This document shows positions 42,227-54,732 of a DNA stretch of 64,000 bases, piece after piece (the first letter of the stretch is position 1; each line of letters opens with the position of its first letter). A program made the translations under genes and the position numbers. The notes beneath the pieces are model-generated. The model searched no databases. It was given only the letters and a program-made list of their open reading frames with translations, and was not told the DNA's origin. Source of the DNA: Dendrobates tinctorius (Eukaryota); assembly GCF_039654945.1 (NCBI RefSeq), contig NW_027361687.1, forward strand, positions 5,518,001 to 5,582,000, written 5' to 3'.

Positions 42227-44711
42227 AGTACCAGTCAGTGTGCCCAAAGTACCAGCCACTGTGCCCATAATGCCAGCCACTGTGCCCTCAGTACCAGTCA
42301 GTGTGATCAGCAGTTCTAAATGGGTGCAATTGGGCGTGGGTGTGGGTGACTAGTTGCAAAATGGGTATAGTCGGGGCATGGCCTACAATTTGCAGCGGGC
42401 ACTGCAGCCTTTGTCCCTCTTTTCCTTCTTTTAAAGTTGGTAGGTATGTTAAGACCAACCATATTATAACATATTCAGTGTCAAAAGAAATCTGTTTTTG
42501 CAGCTTATAGCTTCAGAGTTTTCTCACACCAAACACATGATTTCTACTGAAGGGATAGAGCTCTCTATGGTATTAGTTCCATTTTTTAAGAAGAAGTGAG
42601 GGTTAGGGAATCTGAAAGGTCTCCTTTAAATAATCACTTAACTTTGCAGTTGAATAGTTGTTTCACCCTTAGGATGGCATAGTTTCATTTACAATTACAA
42701 TTGCATATTTTTTAACTGGTGAAATAGATACTCTACTGCAAAATCAAACGATTGTTTGTTAAACTCTGCGTCTATGGTTTTAGGATGCATACTTGCTGCA
42801 CCAAAGCCACGATGCAGCTAGTCCGAGTGGCCCAAAGAGTCTCAGTCTACATCACCAAAAATAATCCATTTCTTTACATTGTGTTATGACTACCTTTAAG
42901 GACAGAACACTTCTTACATTGTAACATGATTCATTCAATGGTTGAATCTCAAGAACAGGCTGTATGTCTCAGCTCAGCGCCTGGTATTCTTCCTTCTCCT
43001 TTTCATTAACACTCGAAAACATAAATGAGTCTTTGTGACGTTTATAAAAGAAGAAGGATTAGACATAAAGGTAAAATCATTGCTGCTCACAAATAATCAT
43101 AAGCAGATCTGTCTGAACACATTTAGCCAATTTTAACCATTTACGATAATTTCAGTACAACAGCGTCAAGGTAGATTTGTTTCAAGATGGTAAATTTTCT
43201 ACTGAACCTTGACAGTTCATGTTAGTTCACAGTTTTGCTGCTTTCAACACCTCAAAGAGCTTTTTTGACACAATTAACTTTTTTTGAGCAACTAAAATAA
43301 AGGTAGGGACACTGGTTACACTCCTCAGAATTGAAACTGCAGCACCAAGAAGGAAAAGGCTTGGAATTATGGAAGTCACTAGATAGACAGAATAATAATG
43401 ATAAAAAATATTGAAGCAACGTTTTGAAAACAACTCAGTCTTTTTAGGATCACGTGCAGAATATATACAGACTTACATGCCTTGGCATGCTATCAAAGAA
43501 GATCCCAATGAAGAATGTTGTGCAAAGCTGAAAGCGCTTGGGCATGAAAATCAAGATCAGCTGATGCAGCTACTGTGCAATTTCCAACCAAAGAAGTCCC
43601 AGATGTGCTTGTTAGAAATTCGGAAACACCATGGTCATATGATTAGGCCGCTCACAGTACCAAGAGCAGCATGTAGCTAGGTTTTGTCATGTTGAAAAAT
43701 GACTCCTGGGAACCTTTGGAGAAATGATTGTATCACTGATTCCATGACCATATCAATGTAACAGCGAGCTGTTAATGTACCGGGAGTGAAGACTAGAGGG
43801 GTCCGGCTACCATACATTATGCTAGCTCACACCATAATCCTAGGAAAAGGACAGGAGTGATGTTTCTTTTTGGAGACCTCTTCATGACCTCATGCCAGTG
43901 GTCTCAAAGGCTATTATAGCGCAGAGTAATACGGCAATAGAGGCTGGAATGGAGTTCCATCCATTCAGCAATGAGTCTCACTTTTATCTTGGGTGAAATG
44001 ATAGCTGGGGATGGGACGTTGATGAGAACATGTGAGGAACACACTTAAAGAGGTTTTCATGAGGGAACATCACAATCACACCAGTCCTGCTGAGATTATG
44101 CTTTGGTTTTGCATAAAGTATGGTAGCCAGACCCCTACAACTTCATGACAGGTACACTAACGGCTCATCTTCACATTAATTTGATCAAGGAAAAAGTGAT
44201 ATGGCCATTTTTCCCAAGTTTCCAAAGACCCGACAATGCCAGTTTGCATGTTGCTTGGGCTACTCCGAGGAGCCTGTGTAGTGTAAATGTGCTACCTTGG
44301 CCTGTAGAAGTTCTGGACTTTACTCCAATGAAGTACATCAGGAGCATCCGTTGTCGACAATTGCAAAAGGAGCTGCCAGCAGTGGATTTTGATAATTTCT
44401 GTAATCAAGTGCATTCAAGGTGGAAGAAGATTCCTCAGACAACCAGTCGGAAGCTCAATCATAGCAACCAAGACTGCATGTACTAATATATAAATATCAT
44501 TTGGAAATGTTTCATCATCTACATATTATTAACATGTGTGTCTATCCTATGATTTCCATTATTCTATGACTTTTATACCTTGATGTTAATTATGCAAATT
44601 GTCTCTTCAGAGAGGAAGAGGACTAGAACTCTAGTGCCACCTATAGGAAGTAGCAATCCTAAAAGCCAATGTCGATCCTTTAACGAGCCTTCTTACATGA
44701 CTTAGGATAAA

Positions 44712-44749
44712 AGCCAAGCCAGAATCTCAATTTGCAGACACTGTGTTTC
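44712..44749 (-). ncRNA. Type I hammerhead ribozyme, 3' half (GAAA, helix III, GUC cleavage triplet, 3' strand of helix I)
   Basis: Minus strand GAAACACAGTGTC^TGCAAATTGAGATTCTGGCTTGGCT; predicted cleavage between 44737 and 44736. Confidence 0.8.
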
Positions 44750-45021
44750 TTTTTTTTTTTTTAAACCCATTCAGGTTAGTGATAAACAACTCAATATAAG
44801 CTCATCAACTTAAAAGTTGTTGTTTCAACTCTCATCATCATGGTTCATATTTATTTTAGTATAGCAAACCAAGGGTATACACAAAAAACATCCTAAACAT
44901 CAATAAACATAACTAAAATTCACTGATATTTGATCAGGTGCTTCCATTTTTTAAATTTCCAGACACCCTCTGCATCAGAACCACCACCGCCTTCGCTGTC
45001 TAATTTATAAATCAAGTATAA

Positions 45022-47400
45022 CCCCTTAGCAACAGAGCCAATTTGCAGCTTAATGACCAGGCCAATTTTTACAATTCTGACCACTGTCCCTTTATGAGAT
45101 TATAACTCTGGAACGCTTTAATGGATCCCGCTGATCCTGAGAATGTTATTCGTGACATATTGTACTTCATGTTAGTGGTAAAATTTCTGCGATAAGTCTT
45201 GTGTTTATTTATGAAAAAAATGGAAATATGGCGAAAATTTTGAAAATTTTGCAATTTTAAAACTTTAAATTTTTATGCCCTTAAATCAGAGAGATGTGTC
45301 ACAAAAATTTCTTAATAAATAACATTTCCCACATGTCTACTTTACATCACCACAATTTTGGAAGCAAAATTTTTTTTTGTTAGGAAGTTATAAGGGTTAA
45401 AAGTTGACCAGCGATTTCTCATTTTTACAACAAAATTGACAAAACCATTTTTTTAAGGGACCACATCATATTTAAAGTCATTTAGAGGGGTGTACATGAC
45501 AGAAAATACCCAAAAGTGGCAACATTCTAAAAACTAGACCCCTCAAAGTGCTCAAAACCTCATTCAAGAAGTTTGTTAACCCTTTAAGTGCTTCACAGGA
45601 ACTAAAGCAATGTGGAAGGAAAAAATTAACATTTAACTTTTTCTTTTTGCAAAAAATTTACTTCAGAACCAATTTTTTTTATTTTCACAAGTGTTAAAAG
45701 AGAAAATCAACCACAAAATTTGTTGTACAATTTCTCCTGAATACGCCGATACCCCATATGTGGGGGTAAACCACTTTTTCAGCACACGGCAGAGCTCGCA
45801 AGGGATGGAGCGCCGTTTTACTTTTTCAACGCAGAATTGGCTGGAATTGAGATCGGATGCCATGTTGCGTTCGGAGAGCCCTTAATGTGCCTAAACAGTG
45901 GAAACCTCCAACAACTGACCCCATTTTGGAAACTAGACCCATTAAGGAACTTATCTAGATGTGTGGTGAGCACTTTGAACCTTCAAGTGCTTCACAGAAG
46001 TTTATAATGTTGAGCCGTGAAAATAAAAAATCAATTTTTTTTCCACAAAATGATGTTTTCGCCCCCAAATTTTTATTTTTACAAGGGTAGCAGGAGAAAT
46101 CATACCCCTGCAGTTGTTGTGCATTTTGTCCTGATTATGCTGATACCCCATATGTGGGGGGGAACCACTGTTTGGGCGCATGGGAGAGCTCGGAAGGGAA
46201 GGAGTGCCATTTTGGAATGCAGACTTTGATGGAATGGTCTGCAGGCTTCATGTTGCATTTGCAGAGCCCCTGATGGGCCTAAACAGTGGAAACCCCCCAC
46301 AAGTGACCCCATTTTGGAAATTAGACCCCCTAAGGAACTTATCTAGATGTGTGGTGAGCACTTTGAACCCCCAAGCGCTTCACAGAAGTTTATAAATGCA
46401 GAGCCGTGAAAATAAAAAGTCTTTTTTATTTCCACAAAAGTGATTTTTTTAGACCCAATTTTTAGACCCCCCAAGTTGGTAAATAGTGGAAACCCCTAAA
46501 TTCTTGCTCCAACCCTAACCCCAACACACCCCTAACCCTAATCCCAACCCTAACCTTAATCCCAACCCTAGTCCCTAATCCTAATTCTAACCCTAATCCT
46601 AGTTCACCCTAACCCTAATTCTAACCATAGCCCTAACCCGAGCCCTAACCCTAGCTCTAGCCCTAACCCTAGTCCAACCCTAACCCTAACTCTAACCCTT
46701 GCCCAACCCTAACCCTAGCACAACCCTAACCCTAGCCCTAACCCTAGCCCAACCCTAACCCTAGCCCAACCCTAACCCTAGCCCTAGCCCTAACCCTAAC
46801 CCTAATGGAAAACTGAAAAAAAAATTATTTTCTTTATTTCGTTATGTAGTCCTAACTAAGGGAGTGATAAACAGGGGGATTATGTACTATTTTGTTTATT
46901 TTGATCACGATGATAGTTTATCATCGTGATAAAAATGAATGAATGGAATCTGCCAGCCGGAGCCTGCAGCTTCCTGGCGGGCGCACTGCGCATGCACCCG
47001 CCATTCTCTTCCGATCCATGATGGCGGCGCTCACCGGAGGACGTCGGCGGGACGCAGGACCACCGGGAGGGGACAGAGGACCACGGAGAGGTACCGGGGG
47101 GATCGGGGACCCTCTTTCTCTCTCCTCTGATGTGCGATCACGTAAGAGGAAAGAGAAATTTAATGCACAATCGTGGCTTCTTTTTTTTGCGGTCGCAATT
47201 ATAGGGTTAATAACTGCGATCGCAAACGCGTGGTCGGTAAAAAACGACTGATTCATGTTCTCTGGGGTCTCGGCTGCCCCTGAAAATCTGACACTGGGGG
47301 GCGCTATTCACTTTCTCCACAGCGCTGTTAATTAGCGGCGCTGTGGTTTTAGTACCCTTAATTACCGCCGTTAAAAGACGTATCGACGGTCGCTAAGGGG
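45022..47400. mobile_element. piggyBac-like non-autonomous element (2379 bp) carrying telomere-like repeats
   Basis: Termini CCCCTTAGC...GCTAAGGGG at an ATAA (TTAA-like) site; removing it approximately restores Tx1 ORF2 (ILSK-L-YLIYK); internal ~410-bp duplications. Confidence 0.8.
46512..46805. repeat. Degenerate (CCCTAA)n interstitial telomere-like repeat
   Basis: Tandem CCCTAA, CCCTAG and CCCAA variants. Confidence 0.9.
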
Positions 47401-49302
47401 AAATTTAGAAAGGATCAGCCCGACACACTTATTCACAGACACATGCTACTCTTTGAAAATTCCTAAATTCCTCACATCCCACAAACTCTGCATCACACAA
47501 GTCATAATTAACCATAAGATTCTATTCTTCTATTTTTCACACGCCCACATGCACCAATTCCAAACATCGCAACATGCCAGTCAATAAAACTCACACCCGC
47601 TAACTCCTTACACAACCCACCTACACACTTCCACACACTGCACGCATAATCACAGTTCCGCATAGTATGCCACACAGTCTCACATCCACCACATCCTTCT
47701 CTCGGGCACACATCAGTTCTGGTCAGACCTCATCTCTTCTGAACCTATCGCACAAGCAAAATATTGTGCAAGGACATCCATACAATATTGTCTATTAGAC
47801 ATCCCGTGCGTTCCCAAACTCTTCCATGCAACCGAAACTTCATTCCCTCTCAAACCCACAATATTACATTCCACATCATTCTTAGGTATTATTTTCATCA
47901 CATTCTTAGCCATTCTAAAATCATTCATCGGTACACTCCGCAAATCATGCTTCCTCACAAACTTCTCAATCACTTCATACCAGACCGGACACTTGAAAGC
48001 AACAGGCACTCTAGTATCCCTCTTTCTCCAACATAAGCCATATAACATCCAACCAGCAGAATAACTTGCCATATACCCTCCCTTATTTCCATTATTCAGC
48101 AAAATAACAATAGTCTTGATGTACTGAAGCCCCAGAAAAATCTCAATGTTTGGAAAGGCCATGCCACCATGGTGACATGCCTTGAAAAGACTCTCTCTCT
48201 TAAGTTTCTCTATTTTACTGCTCCAGAAAAAAGTAAAAACTAACTTTTCCACTCTTTTTATTTTCCTACATGATAGTGGAAAAACTGTTGCAATAAAAAG
48301 CAAAATCGGAAGAATCACCGCTTTTATGACCAAAATCTTACCACTCAAGGTCAAGTCTCTCAGTCGCCAAAAATTTAACTTACGCTCTATGCGCAATCCA
48401 CACTCCTCCCAGCTCTCCTTACCTTCCAAGTCCTTATTAAATAATACTCCCAGCACTTTGATAGCACCCTCCTCACACTTTACCCCCTCCATTTTAACCC
48501 TGTCATCCCCAAAACATTTAAACTACATTTATTCCAATTCACTCTAAAGCCAGATGCACCACAGAAAAAATCCAGAGGAGACTTAACCCTACTCATAGAC
48601 GTAACACTTCCACTCACAGCCACAATATCATCCATATATCCAAGAACTTTCACATGCTTCCCACCACTCCCAGGTACCAACAAACCTCGCATCATTTTAT
48701 CACGTCTCACCAAGCACCACAGAGGTTCAATCACACACACAAACAAAACAGGGGACATGGGACACCCCTGCCTTACACCAGACTTAATATTCACTTTCTC
48801 ACTCAACCACCCATTAACAAGATACTCACTTGACACACAATCATACAAAGACATTATCCCAGTCACAAATTTTTGAGGAAATCCCATTCTATCCAGAACT
48901 TTAAACAAAAACACATGCGAGACCCTATCAAACGCTTTCTCAAAATCATTTGACAGAACCATACACTTCCGTTTCCTTCCCATGCAGTCTCCAATCAAAT
49001 CCCTTAATAACAATAAGTTATCACTCATACTTCTTCCAGGCACAGCACACACTTGAGCCTCATCCACAACACTACCAATCACCTCACGCATGCGATTCGC
49101 CAACAATTTGCTATAGATTTTGTAATCTGCGTTCAGCAATGTTATGGGTCTCCAATTCTCTAAACACTTTCTCTCACCTTTCTTATGCACAAGCACAACC
49201 ACCCCCTCTTTCATTGATTCACACAACTTACCACTCTCCCACATATACTTACATATCTCAGTCAAATCAGCACCCAGAAAATCCAACGCAAGGACACAGG
49301 AC

Positions 49303-50418
49303 AGAGGTTGAGTCAACTTTAATCCATGTCAACTGGCTGCAAGTGTGATTTAGTTATTGCCAACACCTGTTAGGTGCCACAGGTAAGTTACAGGTGCTGT
49401 TAATTACACAAATTAGAGAAGCATCACATGATTTTTCGAACAGTGCCAATACTTTTGTCCACCCTCTTTTTTATGTTTGGTGTGGAATTATATCCAATTT
49501 GTGTTTTTTCATTTAAGACAAATTAAATGAAGATAATACCAAAGAATTTATGTTTGCAATCATTTTCAGGAAGAAACTGTTAGGAATCTGGGTCATTCTA
49601 TGCATATGCAGCAACCCAGATTCTCACATTTGTCTCCAGAGGCTAAGTCCTTTTTCCCTGCTTCTGAGCATGCTCACGGGACTAGCTCTCATTGAAGTCC
49701 AGGAGTCAGGTGCTCAGGTCCTGCTCCTGATTTGATTGGTTATGCTCGGGGCTCTGGAGATTTCCGGCAGGTCCCGTACGCTATAAAAAGTGCGCATGGC
49801 CGCTATGCCATGCGCTAGTATTTTCCATACTTGCTGCTGTGTGTTTGGTGATGGATGCTTGGACTGGTGAATGACTTATTAAGAAACCCCTTCCCTCTGA
49901 TAATACGAATGTGTGAGTGATTGGGATACAGCCAGTGTGCGCGCTAGCGCCAGCGCGCTCAATCTCCACCTTTTAAAGCAGCCTGCATCTTGCATTGCAC
50001 CTGCTAATTGCTCTTGCAGACGTTTTGGGCGTCCGCAGTTGCGACGCCGTGCACACGTCCAGTCACGGTAAGTCCAATTGGTGGTAGTGACGTCTCTAAC
50101 TACCCCAGTCTCTGGCTACCGCACGTGTGCCGCTGATTATCTGTGCGGTATATACAGACTCAGCATTTTTGTGTTTGTGTTCTTGTGAGCAGCTCTGTGA
50201 GTTCCAACAGAGCTTGCTTTTGTGCATCAGGTGCAGTCCTTCCTTGTGCACATTACCGTCCTGGTGCTCTGCCTTTTCAGTAGCGGTTATTACATCTGCC
50301 GCACGGTGGACCCCGAGCGGCGAACACGCTTTATTTATTTTTTTTAAGCGTGTTCCGCCGCCGTACAGAGTATTATCTGACAGAATTGCAGGGGTGTCAA
50401 TACTTTTGACCACAACTG
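49303..50418. mobile_element. One-ended Tc1-type fragment within Tx1 ORF2
   Basis: Terminus GGGGTGTCAATACTTTTGACCACAACTG and inner repeat GTGCCAATACTTTTGTCCAC; adjacent ORF2 sequence appears deleted. Confidence 0.7.
49578..50367 (+). mobile_element. Solo LTR nested in the Tc1 fragment
   Basis: TGTTAGG start; shares GCATGGCCGCT..GCCATGCGCTAGTA and GCACGGTGGACCCCG motifs with the reverse complement of 14854-15825; TSD not evident. Confidence 0.7.
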
Positions 50419-51517
50419 CATTTTGGTGCGATAGTTGATTTCTTTCCCTTTTTCATCCATAACACGCTTTAATTCACTCTTTGTCTCAGCCAGCAGATCA
50501 GACACATCCATCCCACTTTCTCCACACTTCCTTAACCAGTCTAAGCGCCTGTTTAAATCATTAAATCTACTCCAATAAATTGCAGCTTTTTTATAGTCCC
50601 ATTTTTTGAAGGATTTTTTGCAACACACCTTAACCCAGTCCCACCATTCCAGCACACATGGAAAATCCCTCTTACATACTCTCCACTCTTTATACTTTAT
50701 TTTTAGTTCATTCATCACATCCTCATCTTCTAACAATCTTACATTCAGCTTCCAAACCCCACCCCCATACACACGGTCATCAATCGCACTAAACACACCT
50801 CTCAAACACTCATGATCAGAAAAAGGTACAGCACTTTGTTCAAAATTCATACACAACATATTTTTGGAAAACAACTTTTTATCTATCCTGGATGCAATAC
50901 CACCCCTATCAGCATGGTACATTGGTGGTGGTGGGATGCCAAATTTCAGAGCAAGCATCTAGAAGGGAAAAATCAGAAATAAGATTGGATAACTTTTTAC
51001 CAGTTATGTCAGAATTCCCTTCTGTGATGCAATTAAAGTCTCCATCTAAAACTGTAGGCATTTTGCCCGGAAGAAGCAAACTTAATTTTTCCAAAAGAGC
51101 CAGACACTCCTTTTTCCTGTCGTGTCCTGATGGATAGTACACATTAATAATTCTAGCCCGCCACCCCCTATAGCTAACATGTGCAATTATACATCTGCCC
51201 ACCTCTACCACCGTGTAGCTATCTAAACTAATCTCCCTGTTACCCATTAATATCCCTACACATCATTCCTATTAACACATGAGCCAGACCATACATGATG
51301 TCCATAAGGCCGATCCTTATCGCTTGGAGCATCCACAATCCCACATTCCTAAAGACAAAAGATTTGAGCGTTCATCTGTTTAATATAATCTAGAATGATT
51401 GCCCTCCTGAATTTGGATCTAATTTGCTTGACATTCAGGGACGCAATGCCCCATCCAGCTTGGGGAGCCATAACATAACTGTGTTATTTACATGACGACA
51501 AACACGCCACTTCATCT

Positions 51518-52786
51518 TCAGCCGTTTTCGTCTTCCATCTGGAACTGCAACTCCTCGAATCTGTTTACATCTGTGGGAATGCCTAAGAAAGCATTGGTGT
51601 CAGGAGAGAAAACACTCTGAGGGTAACTATGTTCACTCACTGGACTTAAACCAACTTCACCGGGGCCTGCCCAATCCGTTCTGGGCTTCTTACAGGAAGT
51701 TCTAGGCTCCTCATCCTCAGAAGACCTCGCAAGAGTGAAGTCACCTTTATCTCCACAACTGGCCAACTCCTCCTCAGTAGCAAACCAAGATACACTGGGG
51801 GGATTGTCACGAATACTCTCCAACTCCCCCTCCCCACAGACATCAGACTGATGAGGGAGCTCACATTCAACATCAGCAACTTCCAAAACTGCCACCTCTG
51901 GGCTGAGAGACTCCGTTTGGGGCAGGGCCTCCTCATGTGCATCCATGATTTCAGGTTCCTCAATAAGATCCAGGTCTGAAACCTGTGGAATGTCAACAAC
52001 AGCAGCAGGGGGCGCAGCTGCCCCACCTGAGACCTCAGCGTAAGACTTAGGACTGATCCTGACCTTACAGTCCCGATACTTATGGCCCTCCTCACCACAA
52101 GCATTACACATAACAGGATTTGTGCAGTCTTTTGTCATATGGCCAGAAGCATAAAAATTAATGCAAGTTAGCATCTCCTTGCAACTATCCTGGGTATGCC
52201 CAAAATTTTTACACCTCCTGCAATAAATCGGGGCATCTGGAAAGAACAATAAACCACTATTTTTCCCAATTGAAAAATTAAGAGGGGGGTAATGGATGCC
52301 TCCTGGGCCTTGGGGATCCATCCCAAATCTCACAAAAAAATTGTACTTTCCGGTCCAGAGCCCTTCTCCATTCAGTACCCTGTGGGAGTACTGAACATAA
52401 ATGCAATGTCTTTTCAAAAATAAAGCAATGTCCTCCAGGGAAACAAAAGGGTTGAGCATGAAAACTACAAGTGGGATATCTCCCTTAGAGTACAGCACAG
52501 TAAAGGTAAGACCTTCCAGCAAAGGATTTGCAACTCCTTTTTTCAGGGCAGTAAACAAATTCTGGCAATCTGCCATAGAAGATAGCACCAGTACATACCT
52601 GCCTTCTCTCCTAAACTCCTGCAGGCATATTATATCGGACTTCCGAATCTTCAGGATGTCATAAAACACCATGTTGACCAAATATCCCAGGGAAAAATGC
52701 AACTTCTTATCTTCAGCGATGTCAATCCTGGATCCATTTTTGACCCGGCTATCACCGGTCCCAGAGAATTGAAGTCGGACTCCCAT
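51518..52786 (-). CDS. Tx1 ORF1 nucleic-acid-binding protein with CCHC zinc knuckles (ZCCHC3-like family)
   Basis: Uninterrupted ORF from ATG 52786 (MGVRLQF); CRRCKNFGHTQDSC, a degenerate middle knuckle, and CNACGEEGHKYRDC; acidic tail. Confidence 0.85.
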   Translation of the reverse strand: MGVRLQFSGTGDSRVKNGSRIDIAEDKKLHFSLGYLVNMVFYDILKIRKSDIICLQEFRREGRYVLVLSSMADCQNLFTALKKGVANPLLEGLTFTVLYSKGDIPLVVFMLNPFVSLEDIALFLKRHCIYVQYSHRVLNGEGLWTGKYNFFVRFGMDPQGPGGIHYPPLNFSIGKNSGLLFFPDAPIYCRRCKNFGHTQDSCKEMLTCINFYASGHMTKDCTNPVMCNACGEEGHKYRDCKVRISPKSYAEVSGGAAAPPAAVVDIPQVSDLDLIEEPEIMDAHEEALPQTESLSPEVAVLEVADVECELPHQSDVCGEGELESIRDNPPSVSWFATEEELASCGDKGDFTLARSSEDEEPRTSCKKPRTDWAGPGEVGLSPVSEHSYPQSVFSPDTNAFLGIPTDVNRFEELQFQMEDENG

Positions 52787-52918
52787 TGTCCACAACTCCA
52801 AGGATCTCCTCCCCGAAACCTTCTGGCTATCTCCCAAAAGCAGCAACCGGCTTAAGCCACCGAAGTGGCGATGCCGGAAGGCCAAGAGACAGCACTCAAG
52901 TATTCAGGAAACTTTGCA

Positions 52919-52953
52919 CCTCGTCAGTACAAAGTGTGAGATCTGGTTTGGCT
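52919..52953 (-). ncRNA. Type I hammerhead ribozyme, 5' half (5' strand of helix I, CUGACGA box, start of helix II)
   Basis: Minus strand AGCCAAACCAGATCTCACACTTTGTA-CTGACGA-GG; complementary to the 44712-44736 segment. Confidence 0.8.
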
Positions 52954-54732
52954 GTGAAAGAGGCATCTGACCGATATCCAAGAAGTATCATTTCTCCTTG
53001 CGGAGAATAACATGCTAAGCATGTCGAGATGAGGAGACTTAAAGCCACAATGCTCCTCATCTCGACATGCTTAGCATGTTATTCTCCACAAGGAGAAATG
53101 ATACTTCTTGGATACCTTGATGTTGTAATTTCAATGTTGAGAAATGTATTTTTATTTGGAGATTAGGATATGATGTTCTTAATCCTTCTGGAGGAATGTG
53201 ACAGTAGATTTTTTTTCAGTCCCAGTTTCTTCTATGAAAGCTATGAAACACAAGAGCGTCTTGTACCCAACACACAAGGACCAAGCAGATGTGTACTGTG
53301 TCCATTGTGTAAGTAGATGTGTCAGTCTCTTCAGGACCAGAAGAGATAAGTTCATGACCAGCAGGTTTCTGACCCTAAAGCCAGTCAATGGGCAAAGCGA
53401 TGAGGTGACTTGATCCTCTAGAAGGAACTCCCTGAAAGATTAACAGTGATTCAGTACTACCTAAATGTCGTCATAGTCAAATGGCCCAAAAGTATTAATG
53501 AGGCCTAATAAAAAGAGACAAAGCCAATACTTTAGGACAATGCACGACTTAGAGCACGGTAAATAAAGTCGTTATGATTTCTTCTGTTTGCGCAAACATT
53601 TTGGGGCTTAATGTCTCTTGGTTCCTATTTCCTACCAATTTGCTTATGCGTGTCAACAAATTATCTAATTCTACCAATTCTGATTATAAAGAGAAACTCA
53701 TTATGGCACAAGACATCGGCATATAAAAGATGTGATGTTATTATCAGGATGGATCTATTTACAGTGTTGCAAGTGCTTAATTATATGCAGTCGATTATAA
53801 AGCCTCAGTCACGACTCTATAGAATATAATAAATAAATGACTTCCTGTAGAAATTGATGGGCGATCCTCCATCCGACCTCTGGTCATTTACATATATATA
53901 GCTTTTAGGATTTAATATAATTTGCCATTTGTTTTCTCTCTGAATAATATTTAATGCACGTACATAAATCATACATATATGTCAAGAGGCTACAAAGTAT
54001 GTTTTTCCATGTCGGCACAGAACGTCCCAGCACATCTCAAGATAAACGATTAAAGGGTCCAGGCTAAACACTATGTACAAATGAAATGTTCTCATAATTT
54101 TATATAACAGTTTATGTTCTATAAACCTGCAATATATTTGCTGTGCTAATAATAATATAGGATACAAAGTATTAACCTGCAATATATTTACATTAATAAT
54201 ATAGGACATGTAAAAATCTGAAATATAGTTACTATGATTATAATAATAATGTAGGATATGTTTAATAAACTTGTAATATATTTCCTGTGATAATAATCTA
54301 GGCATGTAAACTTTCTGTATGGGCTCACTGGGTGAGGTGGATCCGTTAATCCTCTGGTGCAAGTGGGTACACTGACCATGAGTGTAAGGCCGGGGTCACA
54401 CTAACCGACGCAAAATACAGTCCGTATTTTACATGCGCAATATGGAGAAATGTCCCCTAAATAGTGCTCCGCATGTCATCCGTAAACAAGGTGTGGTCGC
54501 GTATTTTGCACATGTAAGCATCCGTATGTAATCCGTATGTAATCCGTATGGCATCCGTATGGCGAGATTTTCTCGCAGGCTTGCAAAATGGACATTTAAC
54601 TGTTTTGAGGCCTGCAAACTATTTAAATCATTAGCCTACACCCTATTTATTGGCTCTGGAACAGGTGGCTGCCTCCATTCTGTCCATTTGTGACCTTGCC
54701 TTGACTAGATGTGTTGGTGTTGTATGTGCAAC

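What the first reader, a model, noticed from the sequence alone, without database searches (positions are those of the whole stretch)
44712..52953. A Tx1 retrotransposon inserted precisely into helix II of a hammerhead ribozyme: candidate ribozyme-targeting LINE
Seen: removing the Tx1 element (44750-52918) joins, on the minus strand, AGCCAAACCAGATCTCACACTTTGTA-CTGACGA-GG to GAAA-CACAGTGTC-TGCAAATTGAGATTCTGGCTTGGCT. This is a type I hammerhead: CUGANGA and GAAA boxes, minimal helix III (ACAC-A-GTGT), GUC cleavage triplet, helix I TTTGTA/TGCAAA extended by AGCCAAACCAGATCTCA/TGAGATTCTGGCTTGGCT. The LINE poly(A) abuts GAAA and its 5' end follows CTGACGAGG, in the same sense as the ribozyme. There is no TSD, and the 3' strand of helix II is missing. 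Known: Tx1-clade elements are often sequence-specific for multicopy targets (Tx1D DNA transposon, U2 snRNA, tRNA spacers, 5S rDNA, microsatellites). Inference: this family may target the conserved core of hammerhead repeats as a transcribed, multicopy safe harbour; I do not know of such a target being described. It rests on one insertion, and this split ribozyme is probably inactive because the helix II closing pair is lost.
Basis: partly seen in the sequence, partly recalled or inferred. Interest (0 to 1): 0.85.

Follow-up and report, generated by a model that had tools for sequence, protein, structure and literature searches.

The report
LINE that targets hammerhead ribozyme cores
In this frog genome a 5-kb jumping gene related to the U2-gene-specific "Keno" elements has landed hundreds of times at one exact spot inside the self-cutting hammerhead RNA motif of small repeat elements, a target I could not find described for any such element.

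Summary
The minus-strand LINE at 44750-52918 splits a type I hammerhead (HHR) between CUGACGAGG and GAAAC.

- **5' ends:** the LINE's 5' 22-mer occurs 291 times in the 6.36-Gb genome. In 241 cases it follows an exact CTGAYGAGG box. Of 13 exceptions fetched, 12 are the same site with a point mutation.
- **3' ends:** in 30 of 30 fetched copies, poly(A) abuts GAAAC..GUC.
- **Hosts:** at least four retrozyme subfamilies (units of about 326 and 353 bp) that share strong similarity only in the ribozyme core. About 15,000 intact cores exist.
- **Target change:** there is no target-site duplication. Eleven nucleotides (the rest of helix II and loop 2) are missing, so occupied ribozymes are disabled.
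- **Independence:** poly(A) lengths differ between copies. Host subtype changes at least 10 times on a tree of 29 copies, so most copies are independent insertions.
- **Relatives:** the element groups beside LINEs that I found flanked by U2 snRNA (Keno type, Tx1 group).

Verdict: a sequence-specific Tx1-group LINE with a new target class. No paper in the searchable library reports it. The endonuclease specificity and any dependence on host transcription are inferred, not shown.

The parts
44750..52918 (-). Tx1/Keno-group LINE copy, 8.2 kb because of two nested foreign blocks. True LINE segments are 50420-52918, 47402-49289 and 44750-45021.
   Evidence: blastn against the 5.0-5.5-kb full-length copies L066 and L061 gives 94-97% identity, and 91-96% against L063.
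44750..44762 (-). LINE poly(A) tail, 13 nt, directly abutting GAAAC of the ribozyme
   Evidence: Tails of other copies are 4-35 nt long.
51518..52885 (-). LINE ORF1 (455-aa open frame): two ZCCHC3-type RNA-binding domains and a CCHC knuckle
48480..49316 (-). Reverse-transcriptase fragment of the broken ORF2. An APE fragment lies at 50909-51247.
   Evidence: RVT_1 E 5e-35; Exo_endo_phos_2 weak
45022..47401 (.). Foreign DNA nested in the LINE 3' part: tandem repeats of about 390 bp and a degenerate CCCTAA-like tract (46500-46816)
49290..50419 (.). 1.13-kb block that replaces about 350 nt of the LINE between the APE and RT regions. It has no match in other copies.
52919..52953 (-). 5' half of the split hammerhead: extended helix I 5' strand (52928-52953) and the CUGACGA box plus GG, the first two bases of helix II (52919-52927)
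   Evidence: The same box precedes 241 of 291 LINE 5' ends.
44712..44749 (-). 3' half of the split hammerhead: GAAA, minimal helix III, GUC cleavage triplet (44737-44749), then the helix I 3' strand
   Evidence: The same sequence class follows poly(A) in 30 of 30 fetched copies.
52919..53111 (-). 5' part of the host type A retrozyme monomer, including a 62-nt inverted duplication (52975-53036 / 53053-53114)
44589..44749 (-). 3' part of the host type A retrozyme monomer
   Evidence: It is the same family as the 326-bp unit in L036.
44576..44588 (.). Left copy of the 13-bp TSD (ATACCTTGATGTT) of the host retrozyme monomer
53112..53124 (.). Right copy of the 13-bp TSD of the host retrozyme monomer

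Best explanation
This is a family of several hundred copies of a roughly 5-kb LINE. ORF1 is an RNA-binding protein with a CCHC knuckle. ORF2 has an apurinic-type endonuclease (APE), a reverse transcriptase and a zinc-binding tail. The family integrates sequence-specifically into the DNA that encodes the catalytic core of type I hammerhead ribozymes carried by frog non-LTR retrozymes.

Shown: the insertion is always in the ribozyme's sense orientation. The 5' end follows CTGAYGAGG and the poly(A) precedes GAAAC. The 11 nt between them (the rest of helix II and loop 2, GGCARTACCCY) are lost, and there is no target-site duplication. The hosts are at least four retrozyme subfamilies that share strong similarity only in about 30-35 bp of ribozyme core.

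Inferred: the element's endonuclease recognises this conserved duplex. It nicks the antisense strand at 5'-GTTTC^GGGG-3' and primes reverse transcription of the LINE RNA there (target-primed reverse transcription). The sense strand is cut upstream, after GAGG or after GGCAA, which produces a small target deletion.

Consequences: each insertion disables that ribozyme copy, because the G10.1-C11.1 closing pair and the helix II 3' strand are gone. About 15,000 intact cores remain, giving a dispensable multicopy landing site. Because retrozymes are transcribed in other amphibians, the site may also supply read-through transcription, as rDNA does for R2. That step is not shown.
For: - **Junctions in the window:**
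- **3' junctions:** 30 of 30 fetched copies have poly(A) followed by the GAAAC..GUC half of two different repeats.
- **5' junctions:** all 31 junctions in the 30 fetched loci have CTGAYGAGG before the LINE start, in four host variants.
- **Genome-wide 5' counts:** 291 exact LINE 5' ends, 241 with the exact box at a fixed offset, and 0 hits for the reversed controls. Of 13 exceptions, 12 are the same site with one mutated base.
- **Genome-wide 3' counts:** 353 exact 3' ends, with 245 matches (a few overlapping) to GAAACA 6-34 nt downstream.
- **Intact targets:** 14,927 exact cores. Their sequence defines the 11-nt deletion.
- **Hammerhead fold:** 96% of cells paired and 5 covarying pairs, against 27-63% in slid controls.
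- **Hosts unrelated outside the core:** z = 2.3.
- **Independent events:** tails of different length; arrays stay in phase beyond the LINE; host subtype changes at least 10 times on the LINE tree; B1/B2 hosts are placed as at random (4 changes against 4-5 in shuffles).
- **Flank agreement:** the flank types on the two sides of each full-length copy agree.
- **Relatives are target-specific:** LINEs at 38-39% identity are flanked by U2 snRNA, and the family sits beside them on a tree.
Against: - No biochemical evidence exists for the endonuclease's specificity or nick site.
- Host type A versus B is clustered on the LINE tree (3 changes against about 9 in shuffles). Some amplification may therefore follow the host, or LINE subfamilies may differ in preference or age.
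- At least one adjacent pair is a tandem duplicate (identical odd tails 5,354 bp apart).
- No clean 5'-truncated copy joined to the box was seen among 30 3' ends. Such a copy would have been direct evidence of target-primed reverse transcription.
- One copy (L077) has an unrelated 5' flank.
- All 12 full-length copies inspected have a broken ORF2, although one search lists open frames of about 1,130 aa at other copies.
- RNA evidence is lacking. The candidate RNA runs are only guessed to be RNA and are kept as contigs.
Confidence: 0.85

Rival explanations
1. Passenger model. One or a few ancestral insertions into a retrozyme unit were then multiplied by the host: by the retrozyme's own retrotransposition of a composite RNA, or by unequal crossing-over or segmental duplication of arrays. 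The LINE itself would not be site-specific.
For: Host type A versus B is clustered on the LINE tree (3 changes against about 9 expected). One pair of copies 5,354 bp apart (LINE plus one 353-bp unit) has identical idiosyncratic tails. Nearly all copies are full length. In the window, the TSD encloses retrozyme plus LINE together.
Against: The same junction occurs in at least four host subfamilies that are alike only in the core. At least 10 host-subtype changes occur among 29 copies, and B1/B2 placement is random among LINEs only about 2-3% apart. Tails range from 4 to 35 nt. Single LINEs sit inside otherwise regular, in-phase arrays rather than in every unit, which argues against rolling-circle copying of a composite. 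Even this model needs several independent hits at the same nucleotide, which already implies specificity.
Confidence: 0.08
2. The hammerhead halves belong to the LINE itself, as terminal sequences carried along with it (a ribozyme-bearing LINE, as R2 carries an HDV-like ribozyme), rather than to a target.
For: Every copy is bracketed by the two halves in the sense orientation.
Against: The order is wrong for a carried ribozyme: the enzyme half lies upstream and the cleavage half lies downstream of the whole element. Sequence beyond the core differs between copies and continues into complete units of distinct retrozyme families on both sides. About 15,000 uninterrupted cores exist without any LINE. 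No Rfam ribozyme is found inside the element.
Confidence: 0.02
3. The integration machinery recognises a nucleic-acid structure, not the duplex sequence. Candidates are a cruciform or hairpin extruded from the helix II palindrome GGGG-CAATA-CCCC, or an R-loop or RNA:DNA hybrid formed by abundant retrozyme RNA.
For: The site is centred on a short palindrome, and the hosts are presumably heavily transcribed (PMC7229834 for axolotl). A distantly related LINE in Ranitomeya ends in loop 2, 6 nt away from the junction used here.
Against: Nothing tested here separates this from plain sequence recognition. Both junctions are fixed to the nucleotide, as in sequence-specific APE LINEs. Known relatives (Keno in U2 genes) are explained by sequence specificity.
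Confidence: 0.05

Closest known systems
Keno (Tx1-clade LINEs specific for U2 snRNA genes; Kojima and Fujiwara 2004, as summarised in PMC4494074)
   Same: Same ORF2 architecture (APE, RT, zinc-binding tail) and same ORF1 type. The element has a poly(A) end, inserts at a nucleotide-precise position and in a fixed orientation in a multicopy transcribed target. Relatives at 38-39% identity (P0011, P0019, P0024), and Anomaloglossus P0195 of the more distant amphibian family, are flanked by U2 snRNA starting at TCTGTTCTTATCAG. The family is sister to the fish U2-flanked clade on the tree.
   Different: The target is a ribozyme core inside another retroelement, not a host snRNA gene. It is recognised across several unrelated-looking repeat families. 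Identity to the U2-flanked elements is below 40%.
Tx1L of Xenopus laevis (inserts into the Tx1D DNA transposon) and crocodilian Tx1 families that insert into Mariner, Harbinger or LTR elements (PMC4494074)
   Same: A LINE that uses a specific site in another mobile element as its landing pad.
   Different: Those targets are single transposon families. Here the recognised site is a functional RNA motif shared by several families, and insertion destroys the motif. Placement relative to Tx1L itself was not tested.
R2 and R1 elements in 28S rDNA
   Same: Site-specific and sense-oriented. The target suffers a small deletion or has no large duplication. The elements are likely to be co-transcribed with a highly expressed tandem target.
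   Different: R2 uses a restriction-like endonuclease and carries its own HDV-like ribozyme for 5' processing. Here the element has an APE and no detectable ribozyme of its own, and it interrupts the host's ribozyme. Co-transcription is not shown.
Amphibian non-LTR retrozymes / newt satellite 2 (PMC7229834; bioRxiv 10.64898/2026.07.22.740005), which are the host, not the LINE
   Same: Tandem or solo units of about 326 and 353 bp carrying a type I hammerhead with a very short helix III. This matches axolotl Rtz331 and Rtz353, whose ribozymes act as dimers. Solo units have TSDs of 12-14 bp.
   Different: Those papers do not mention LINE insertions in the ribozyme.

Membership tests
Tx1-clade (L1/Tx1 group) non-LTR retrotransposon | ORF2 with an N-terminal apurinic-type endonuclease, a reverse transcriptase and a C-terminal zinc-binding motif | tested here: met
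   Pfam Exo_endo_phos, RVT_1 and zf-RVT on unmodified ORF pieces of copies L066 and L072. The best solved-structure match is human L1 ORF2p (E 1e-56).
Tx1-clade (L1/Tx1 group) non-LTR retrotransposon | ORF1 with RNA-binding domains and a CCHC zinc knuckle | tested here: met
   RBD_ZCCHC3_1st (weak, below Pfam's cutoff), RBD_ZCCHC3_2nd and zf-CCHC
Tx1-clade (L1/Tx1 group) non-LTR retrotransposon | Phylogenetic grouping of the RT with recognised Tx1-clade elements | tested here: inconclusive
   The family groups (97-99% SH-aLRT) beside elements that I showed to be U2-flanked, i.e. Keno type, including Danio BAC82621. One relative is named 'transposon TX1 149 kDa protein' by NCBI. No tree with Tx1L, L1 or other clade references could be built.
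Tx1-clade (L1/Tx1 group) non-LTR retrotransposon | Sequence-specific insertion (common in the clade, not universal) | tested here: met
Type I hammerhead ribozyme (the target) | Conserved core: CUGANGA, GAAA, A15.1-U16.1 pair, cleavage triplet GUC | tested here: met
   Core columns are invariant or nearly so in 19 intact copies. 14,927 exact cores in the genome.
Type I hammerhead ribozyme (the target) | Helices I, II and III supported by covariation, with helix I open | tested here: met
   96% of cells paired and 5 pairs with changes on both sides, against 27-63% paired in slid controls. Helix III has only 3 pairs and its sequence is palindromic (dimer type). The monomer MFE fold forms helices I and II only.
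Type I hammerhead ribozyme (the target) | Match to the curated Rfam hammerhead models | tested here: not met
   No hit at gathering threshold in the window, nor at E<=1 on loci with intact copies. This may reflect the minimal helix III, but I did not confirm it.
Type I hammerhead ribozyme (the target) | Self-cleavage activity | not testable with these tools
   Related axolotl and Xenopus retrozyme ribozymes cleave in vitro (PMC7229834; 10.64898/2026.07.22.740005).
R2-like co-transcribed site-specific element | Expression by read-through from the target's promoter and processing out of the co-transcript | not tested
   Only contigs of runs whose RNA status is a guess were available. No ribozyme was found in the LINE.

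The most novel reading that the evidence does not exclude
Frog Keno-group LINEs have switched from a host gene target (U2 snRNA) to the catalytic core of a ribozyme carried by another parasite (retrozymes). They now live as hyperparasites that depend on retrozyme transcription, as R2 depends on rDNA. The niche may be recurrent or old. One Ranitomeya imitator copy belongs to a different amphibian LINE family, whose Anomaloglossus relative sits in U2 genes. That copy also ends in loop 2 of the homologous retrozyme ribozyme, 6 nt from the junction used here. Because each hit kills a ribozyme, the LINE could limit retrozyme and circRNA output.
Probability: 0.3. Interest if true: 0.8.

Novelty: new variant of a known kind. 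Interest (0 to 1): 0.7.

Why it matters
Target-specific LINEs are studied as natural safe-harbour integrators, and as models for how an apurinic-type endonuclease acquires sequence specificity. Known targets are rRNA, snRNA and tRNA genes, microsatellites, satellites and a few transposons.

A family aimed at about 30 bp of a ribozyme core adds a new kind of target.
- It is short and defined by RNA function, so it stays conserved across otherwise diverged repeat families.
- It gives the element about 15,000 equivalent sites that cannot easily mutate away without losing ribozyme activity.

It is also a clear case of one retroelement parasitising, and inactivating, another.

The close neighbourhood of U2-specific relatives makes the target switch directly testable. 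The endonuclease domains can be compared and swapped in ordinary in vitro nicking assays.

Tried and rejected
1. **Rfam.** No hammerhead hit in the window (gathering threshold) or in loci with intact units (E<=1). I therefore showed the fold by core conservation and covariation. No ribozyme was found inside the LINE. A weak U3-like hit on the 3' UTR (29 bits against a cutoff of 55) is taken as chance.

2. **LINE 5' end as a degenerate copy of the ribozyme's 3' half.** Local alignment is not better than shuffles for type B (227 of 1000) and marginal and out of register for type A (12 of 1000). Dropped.

3. **5'-truncated copies joined to the box.** Truncations in 30 loci are nested foreign insertions or rearrangements, not clean target-primed truncations.

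4. **G-interrupted tails ((A)nG(A)mGAAAC, about 28 of 100) as a sign of read-through templates.** The frequency is about what A-to-G substitution at 2-3% divergence would give. Not used as evidence.

5. **Expression.** The runs found are kept as contigs and their RNA status is a guess. They show only that contigs from two other organism labels carry the LINE 5' end running into type A retrozyme sequence.

6. **Closest protein relatives (P0001, P0003).** Their contigs end at poly(A) and give no flank information.

7. **Relatives of the Ranitomeya element** in bullfrog, Leptodactylus and Rhinoderma show neither hammerhead nor U2 at the 3' end.

8. **Own-genome copies of that second family** could not be cut out.

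Only unmodified ORF pieces were used.


Full report
**1. The observation**

Searches confirm both junctions. On the minus strand the upstream flank ends ...CACACTTTGTA-CTGACGAGG (52919-52927). The LINE starts TGCAAAGTTTCC at 52918. It ends in a 13-nt poly(A) at 44750-44762. The downstream flank starts GAAACACAGTGTC-TGCAAATTGAG (44737-44749 and onward).

The 8.2-kb insert is a LINE. ORF1 has ZCCHC3-type RNA-binding domains and a CCHC knuckle, and there are APE and RT fragments. It is a dead copy. Only 50420-52918, 47402-49289 and 44750-45021 match other copies, at about 95%. Foreign blocks lie at 45022-47401 and 49290-50419.

The host is a solo retrozyme monomer bounded by its own 13-bp duplication, ATACCTTGATGTT (44576-44588 and 53112-53124).

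**2. It is a family property, not one insertion**

The window lies in a 6.36-Gb assembly.

- The LINE 3' UTR gave at least 540 candidates. In all 30 fetched loci the poly(A) is followed by the GAAAC..GUC half of a hammerhead, in two clearly different repeats. Type A continues TGCAAATTGAGATTCTGG. Type B continues TGTGGATGGATACC.
- The 5' UTR gave at least 461 candidates. All 31 junctions seen in the 30 fetched loci have CTGAYGAGG immediately before the LINE start, in four host variants: A1, A2, B1 and B2.
- Exact-pattern counts over the whole genome: the LINE 5' 22-mer occurs 291 times. With CTGAYGAGG exactly 5 nt upstream there are 241 matches. The reversed-pattern controls gave 0.
- I fetched 13 of the roughly 50 cases without an exact box. 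Twelve are the same site with one mutated base. One (L077) has an unrelated flank. So about 98% of full-length copies sit in the ribozyme.
- At the 3' end there are 353 exact 17-mers. There are 245 matches (a few overlapping) with GAAACA 6-34 nt downstream. The rest are explained by mutated GAAAC variants, as seen in the 30-locus sample.

**3. The target**

Intact units in the flanks read:
- Type A: CTGACGAGGGGCAGTACCCYGAAACACAGTGTC (unit 326 bp)
- Type B: CTGATGAGGGGCAAYACCCCGAAACAGCTGTC (unit 353 bp, tandem)

The genome holds 14,927 exact cores, so only a few percent are occupied.

Occupied sites lack GGCARTACCCY. This is an 11-nt target deletion with no duplication. The 5' edge is ambiguous by up to 5 nt, because some LINE subfamilies begin GGCAA, like the target.

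An alignment of 19 intact copies shows the full conserved core. The three helices are 96% paired, with compensatory changes at 5 pairs. Slid controls pair 27-63%. Helix III is only 3 bp and palindromic, and a monomer folds helices I and II only. This is the dimer-acting amphibian type described for axolotl Rtz331 and Rtz353 (PMC7229834). It may also be why Rfam models do not call it, though I did not confirm that.

Outside about 35 nt of core, types A and B are barely alignable (z = 2.3). The core is therefore what the LINE recognises.

**4. Independent insertions or passengers?**

For independent insertions:
- Tails range from 4 to 35 nt and differ between copies.
- Arrays continue in phase beyond single LINEs.
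- Flank types agree on both sides of 12 full-length copies.
- On a tree of the first 1.4 kb of 29 copies, host subtype changes at least 10 times.
- B1 and B2 hosts are distributed as at random (4 changes; shuffles give 4-5), even among LINEs 2-3% apart.

Against a purely independent picture:
- A versus B is clustered (3 changes against about 9). I cannot tell whether this reflects subfamily preference, age, or some co-amplification.
- One adjacent pair with identical odd tails, 5,354 bp apart, is a tandem duplicate.
- No clean 5'-truncated copy joined to the box was found.

The passenger model is disfavoured but not excluded as a minor contributor.

**5. What the LINE is**

Full-length copies are about 5.0 kb, with variants of 5.45-6.4 kb. 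All 12 inspected have a broken ORF2. One search lists open frames of about 1,130 aa at other copies.

ORF2 pieces carry APE, RVT_1 and zf-RVT. The best solved relative is human L1 ORF2p. The best database proteins are only 45% identical.

Relatives at 38-39% identity (P0011, P0019, P0024), and Anomaloglossus P0195 of the more distant amphibian family, have their poly(A) followed by U2 snRNA from TCTGTTCTTATCAG. Rfam confirms the U2 identity. They are therefore Keno-type, U2-specific Tx1-clade LINEs (PMC4494074).

On a protein tree the hammerhead LINE falls in a 99%-supported clade with five frog-derived contigs, then X. tropicalis proteins. That clade is sister (97%) to the fish U2-flanked clade, which includes Danio BAC82621. 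I could not include Tx1L or L1 references, so the clade label is supported but not formally proven.

**6. Mechanism**

Shown: position, orientation, the deletion, and multi-family host range.

Inferred from what is established for APE-type site-specific LINEs: the endonuclease recognises the core duplex and nicks the antisense strand at GTTTC^GGGG. The 3' OH primes reverse transcription at the poly(A). The second cut lies 6-11 nt upstream on the sense strand. The GGCAA shared by target and some LINE 5' ends may help join the 5' end.

The interrupted ribozyme lacks the helix II 3' strand and the G10.1-C11.1 pair, so it should be inactive.

A safe-harbour benefit is plausible. Dependence on host transcription is untested. 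Contigs from two other organism labels also carry the LINE joined to type A sequence, but their RNA status is only guessed.

**7. Novelty**

Full-text searches found no report of a LINE in or targeting a hammerhead. The terms were: hammerhead with Tx1; hammerhead with site-specific retrotransposon; retrozyme papers; and Tx1 with satellite.

The retrozyme papers read (PMC7229834; 10.64898/2026.07.22.740005) do not mention it.

Caveats: Repbase reports and subscription journals are not searchable here. Kojima's Tx1 tree lists some families with 'satellite' targets that I could not see.

I rate it a new variant of a known kind: target-specific Tx1-group LINEs.

**8. A lead beyond this genome**

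One Ranitomeya imitator copy (P0058, 33-34% identity to this LINE) belongs to a different amphibian LINE family. It ends poly(A)|CAGTCCGAAACACTGTGTC. That junction lies in loop 2 of a retrozyme unit 73% identical to type A, and eight more units follow. Its Anomaloglossus relative sits in U2 genes.

This is a single case without a 5' junction. Bullfrog, Leptodactylus and Rhinoderma relatives show nothing similar.

Read laying was given 5,901 letters. No N runs were involved.

Noticed in passing
L093:12571-15290 (Ranitomeya imitator, GCA_958301615.1): A LINE of a different amphibian family (P0058; its Anomaloglossus relative is U2-flanked) ends poly(A)|CAGTCCGAAACACTGTGTC. The junction is in loop 2 of a hammerhead, 6 nt upstream of the junction used in this genome. 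It is followed by eight 331-bp retrozyme units that are 73% identical to type A here. No retrozyme lies upstream of it.
   Followed up: partly
LINE tree of L031-L060: LINE lineages are associated with host type A versus B (3 changes against about 9 by chance), but not with B1 versus B2. This could reflect subfamily preference for CTGACGAGG..CAGTACCCY versus CTGATGAGG..CAATACCCC cores, different ages, or homing through read-through RNA. It is unexplained.
   Followed up: partly
window 45022-47401: A 2.4-kb foreign block nested in the LINE: about 2.5 tandem units of about 390 bp, followed by a degenerate CCCTAA-like (telomere-type) tract at 46500-46816.
   Followed up: no
window 49290-50419: A 1.13-kb block replaces about 350 nt between the APE and RT regions. 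The same interval differs in length among copies (347, 815 and 1,130 nt), so it is a variable or insertion-prone part of the element.
   Followed up: no
window 52975-53114: A 62-nt inverted repeat, 98% complementary with a 16-nt spacer. It is an inverted duplication at the 5' end of the host retrozyme monomer.
   Followed up: no
L062 and L064 (own genome, C22 and C7): Two odd 5' junctions. In L062 an apparently complete ribozyme (CTGATGAGGGACAACACCCCAAAACAGCT) is followed directly by GAGG and the LINE. In L064 about 60 bp of upstream retrozyme are missing between two TGATG repeats.
   Followed up: no
G000:C65:2809937 and C65:2815291: Two LINE 3' ends 5,354 bp apart (LINE plus one 353-bp unit) share an identical unusual tail (GGGTTTTTTTC(A)16). 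This is a tandem duplication of LINE plus unit, not two insertions.
   Followed up: no
G000 contigs C65, C574, C652: Dozens of other Tx1-like ORF2 copies with uninterrupted frames of 1,115-1,164 aa lie a few kb to tens of kb apart on these contigs. They are probably the minisatellite-targeting Tx1 families noted by other readers of this genome.
   Followed up: no
one search list of 3' tails: About 28 of 100 tails have one G inside the A run ((A)nG(A)mGAAAC). One tail reads GAAACAAAAAAGAAACA, a duplicated GAAACA. This is compatible with ordinary A-to-G decay, but it could also reflect templates that read a few bases into the target.
   Followed up: partly
L090-L092 (fish or metagenome contigs): U2-flanked Keno-type LINEs sit in clusters with U1, U5 and U6 snRNA and tRNA genes.
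   Followed up: no
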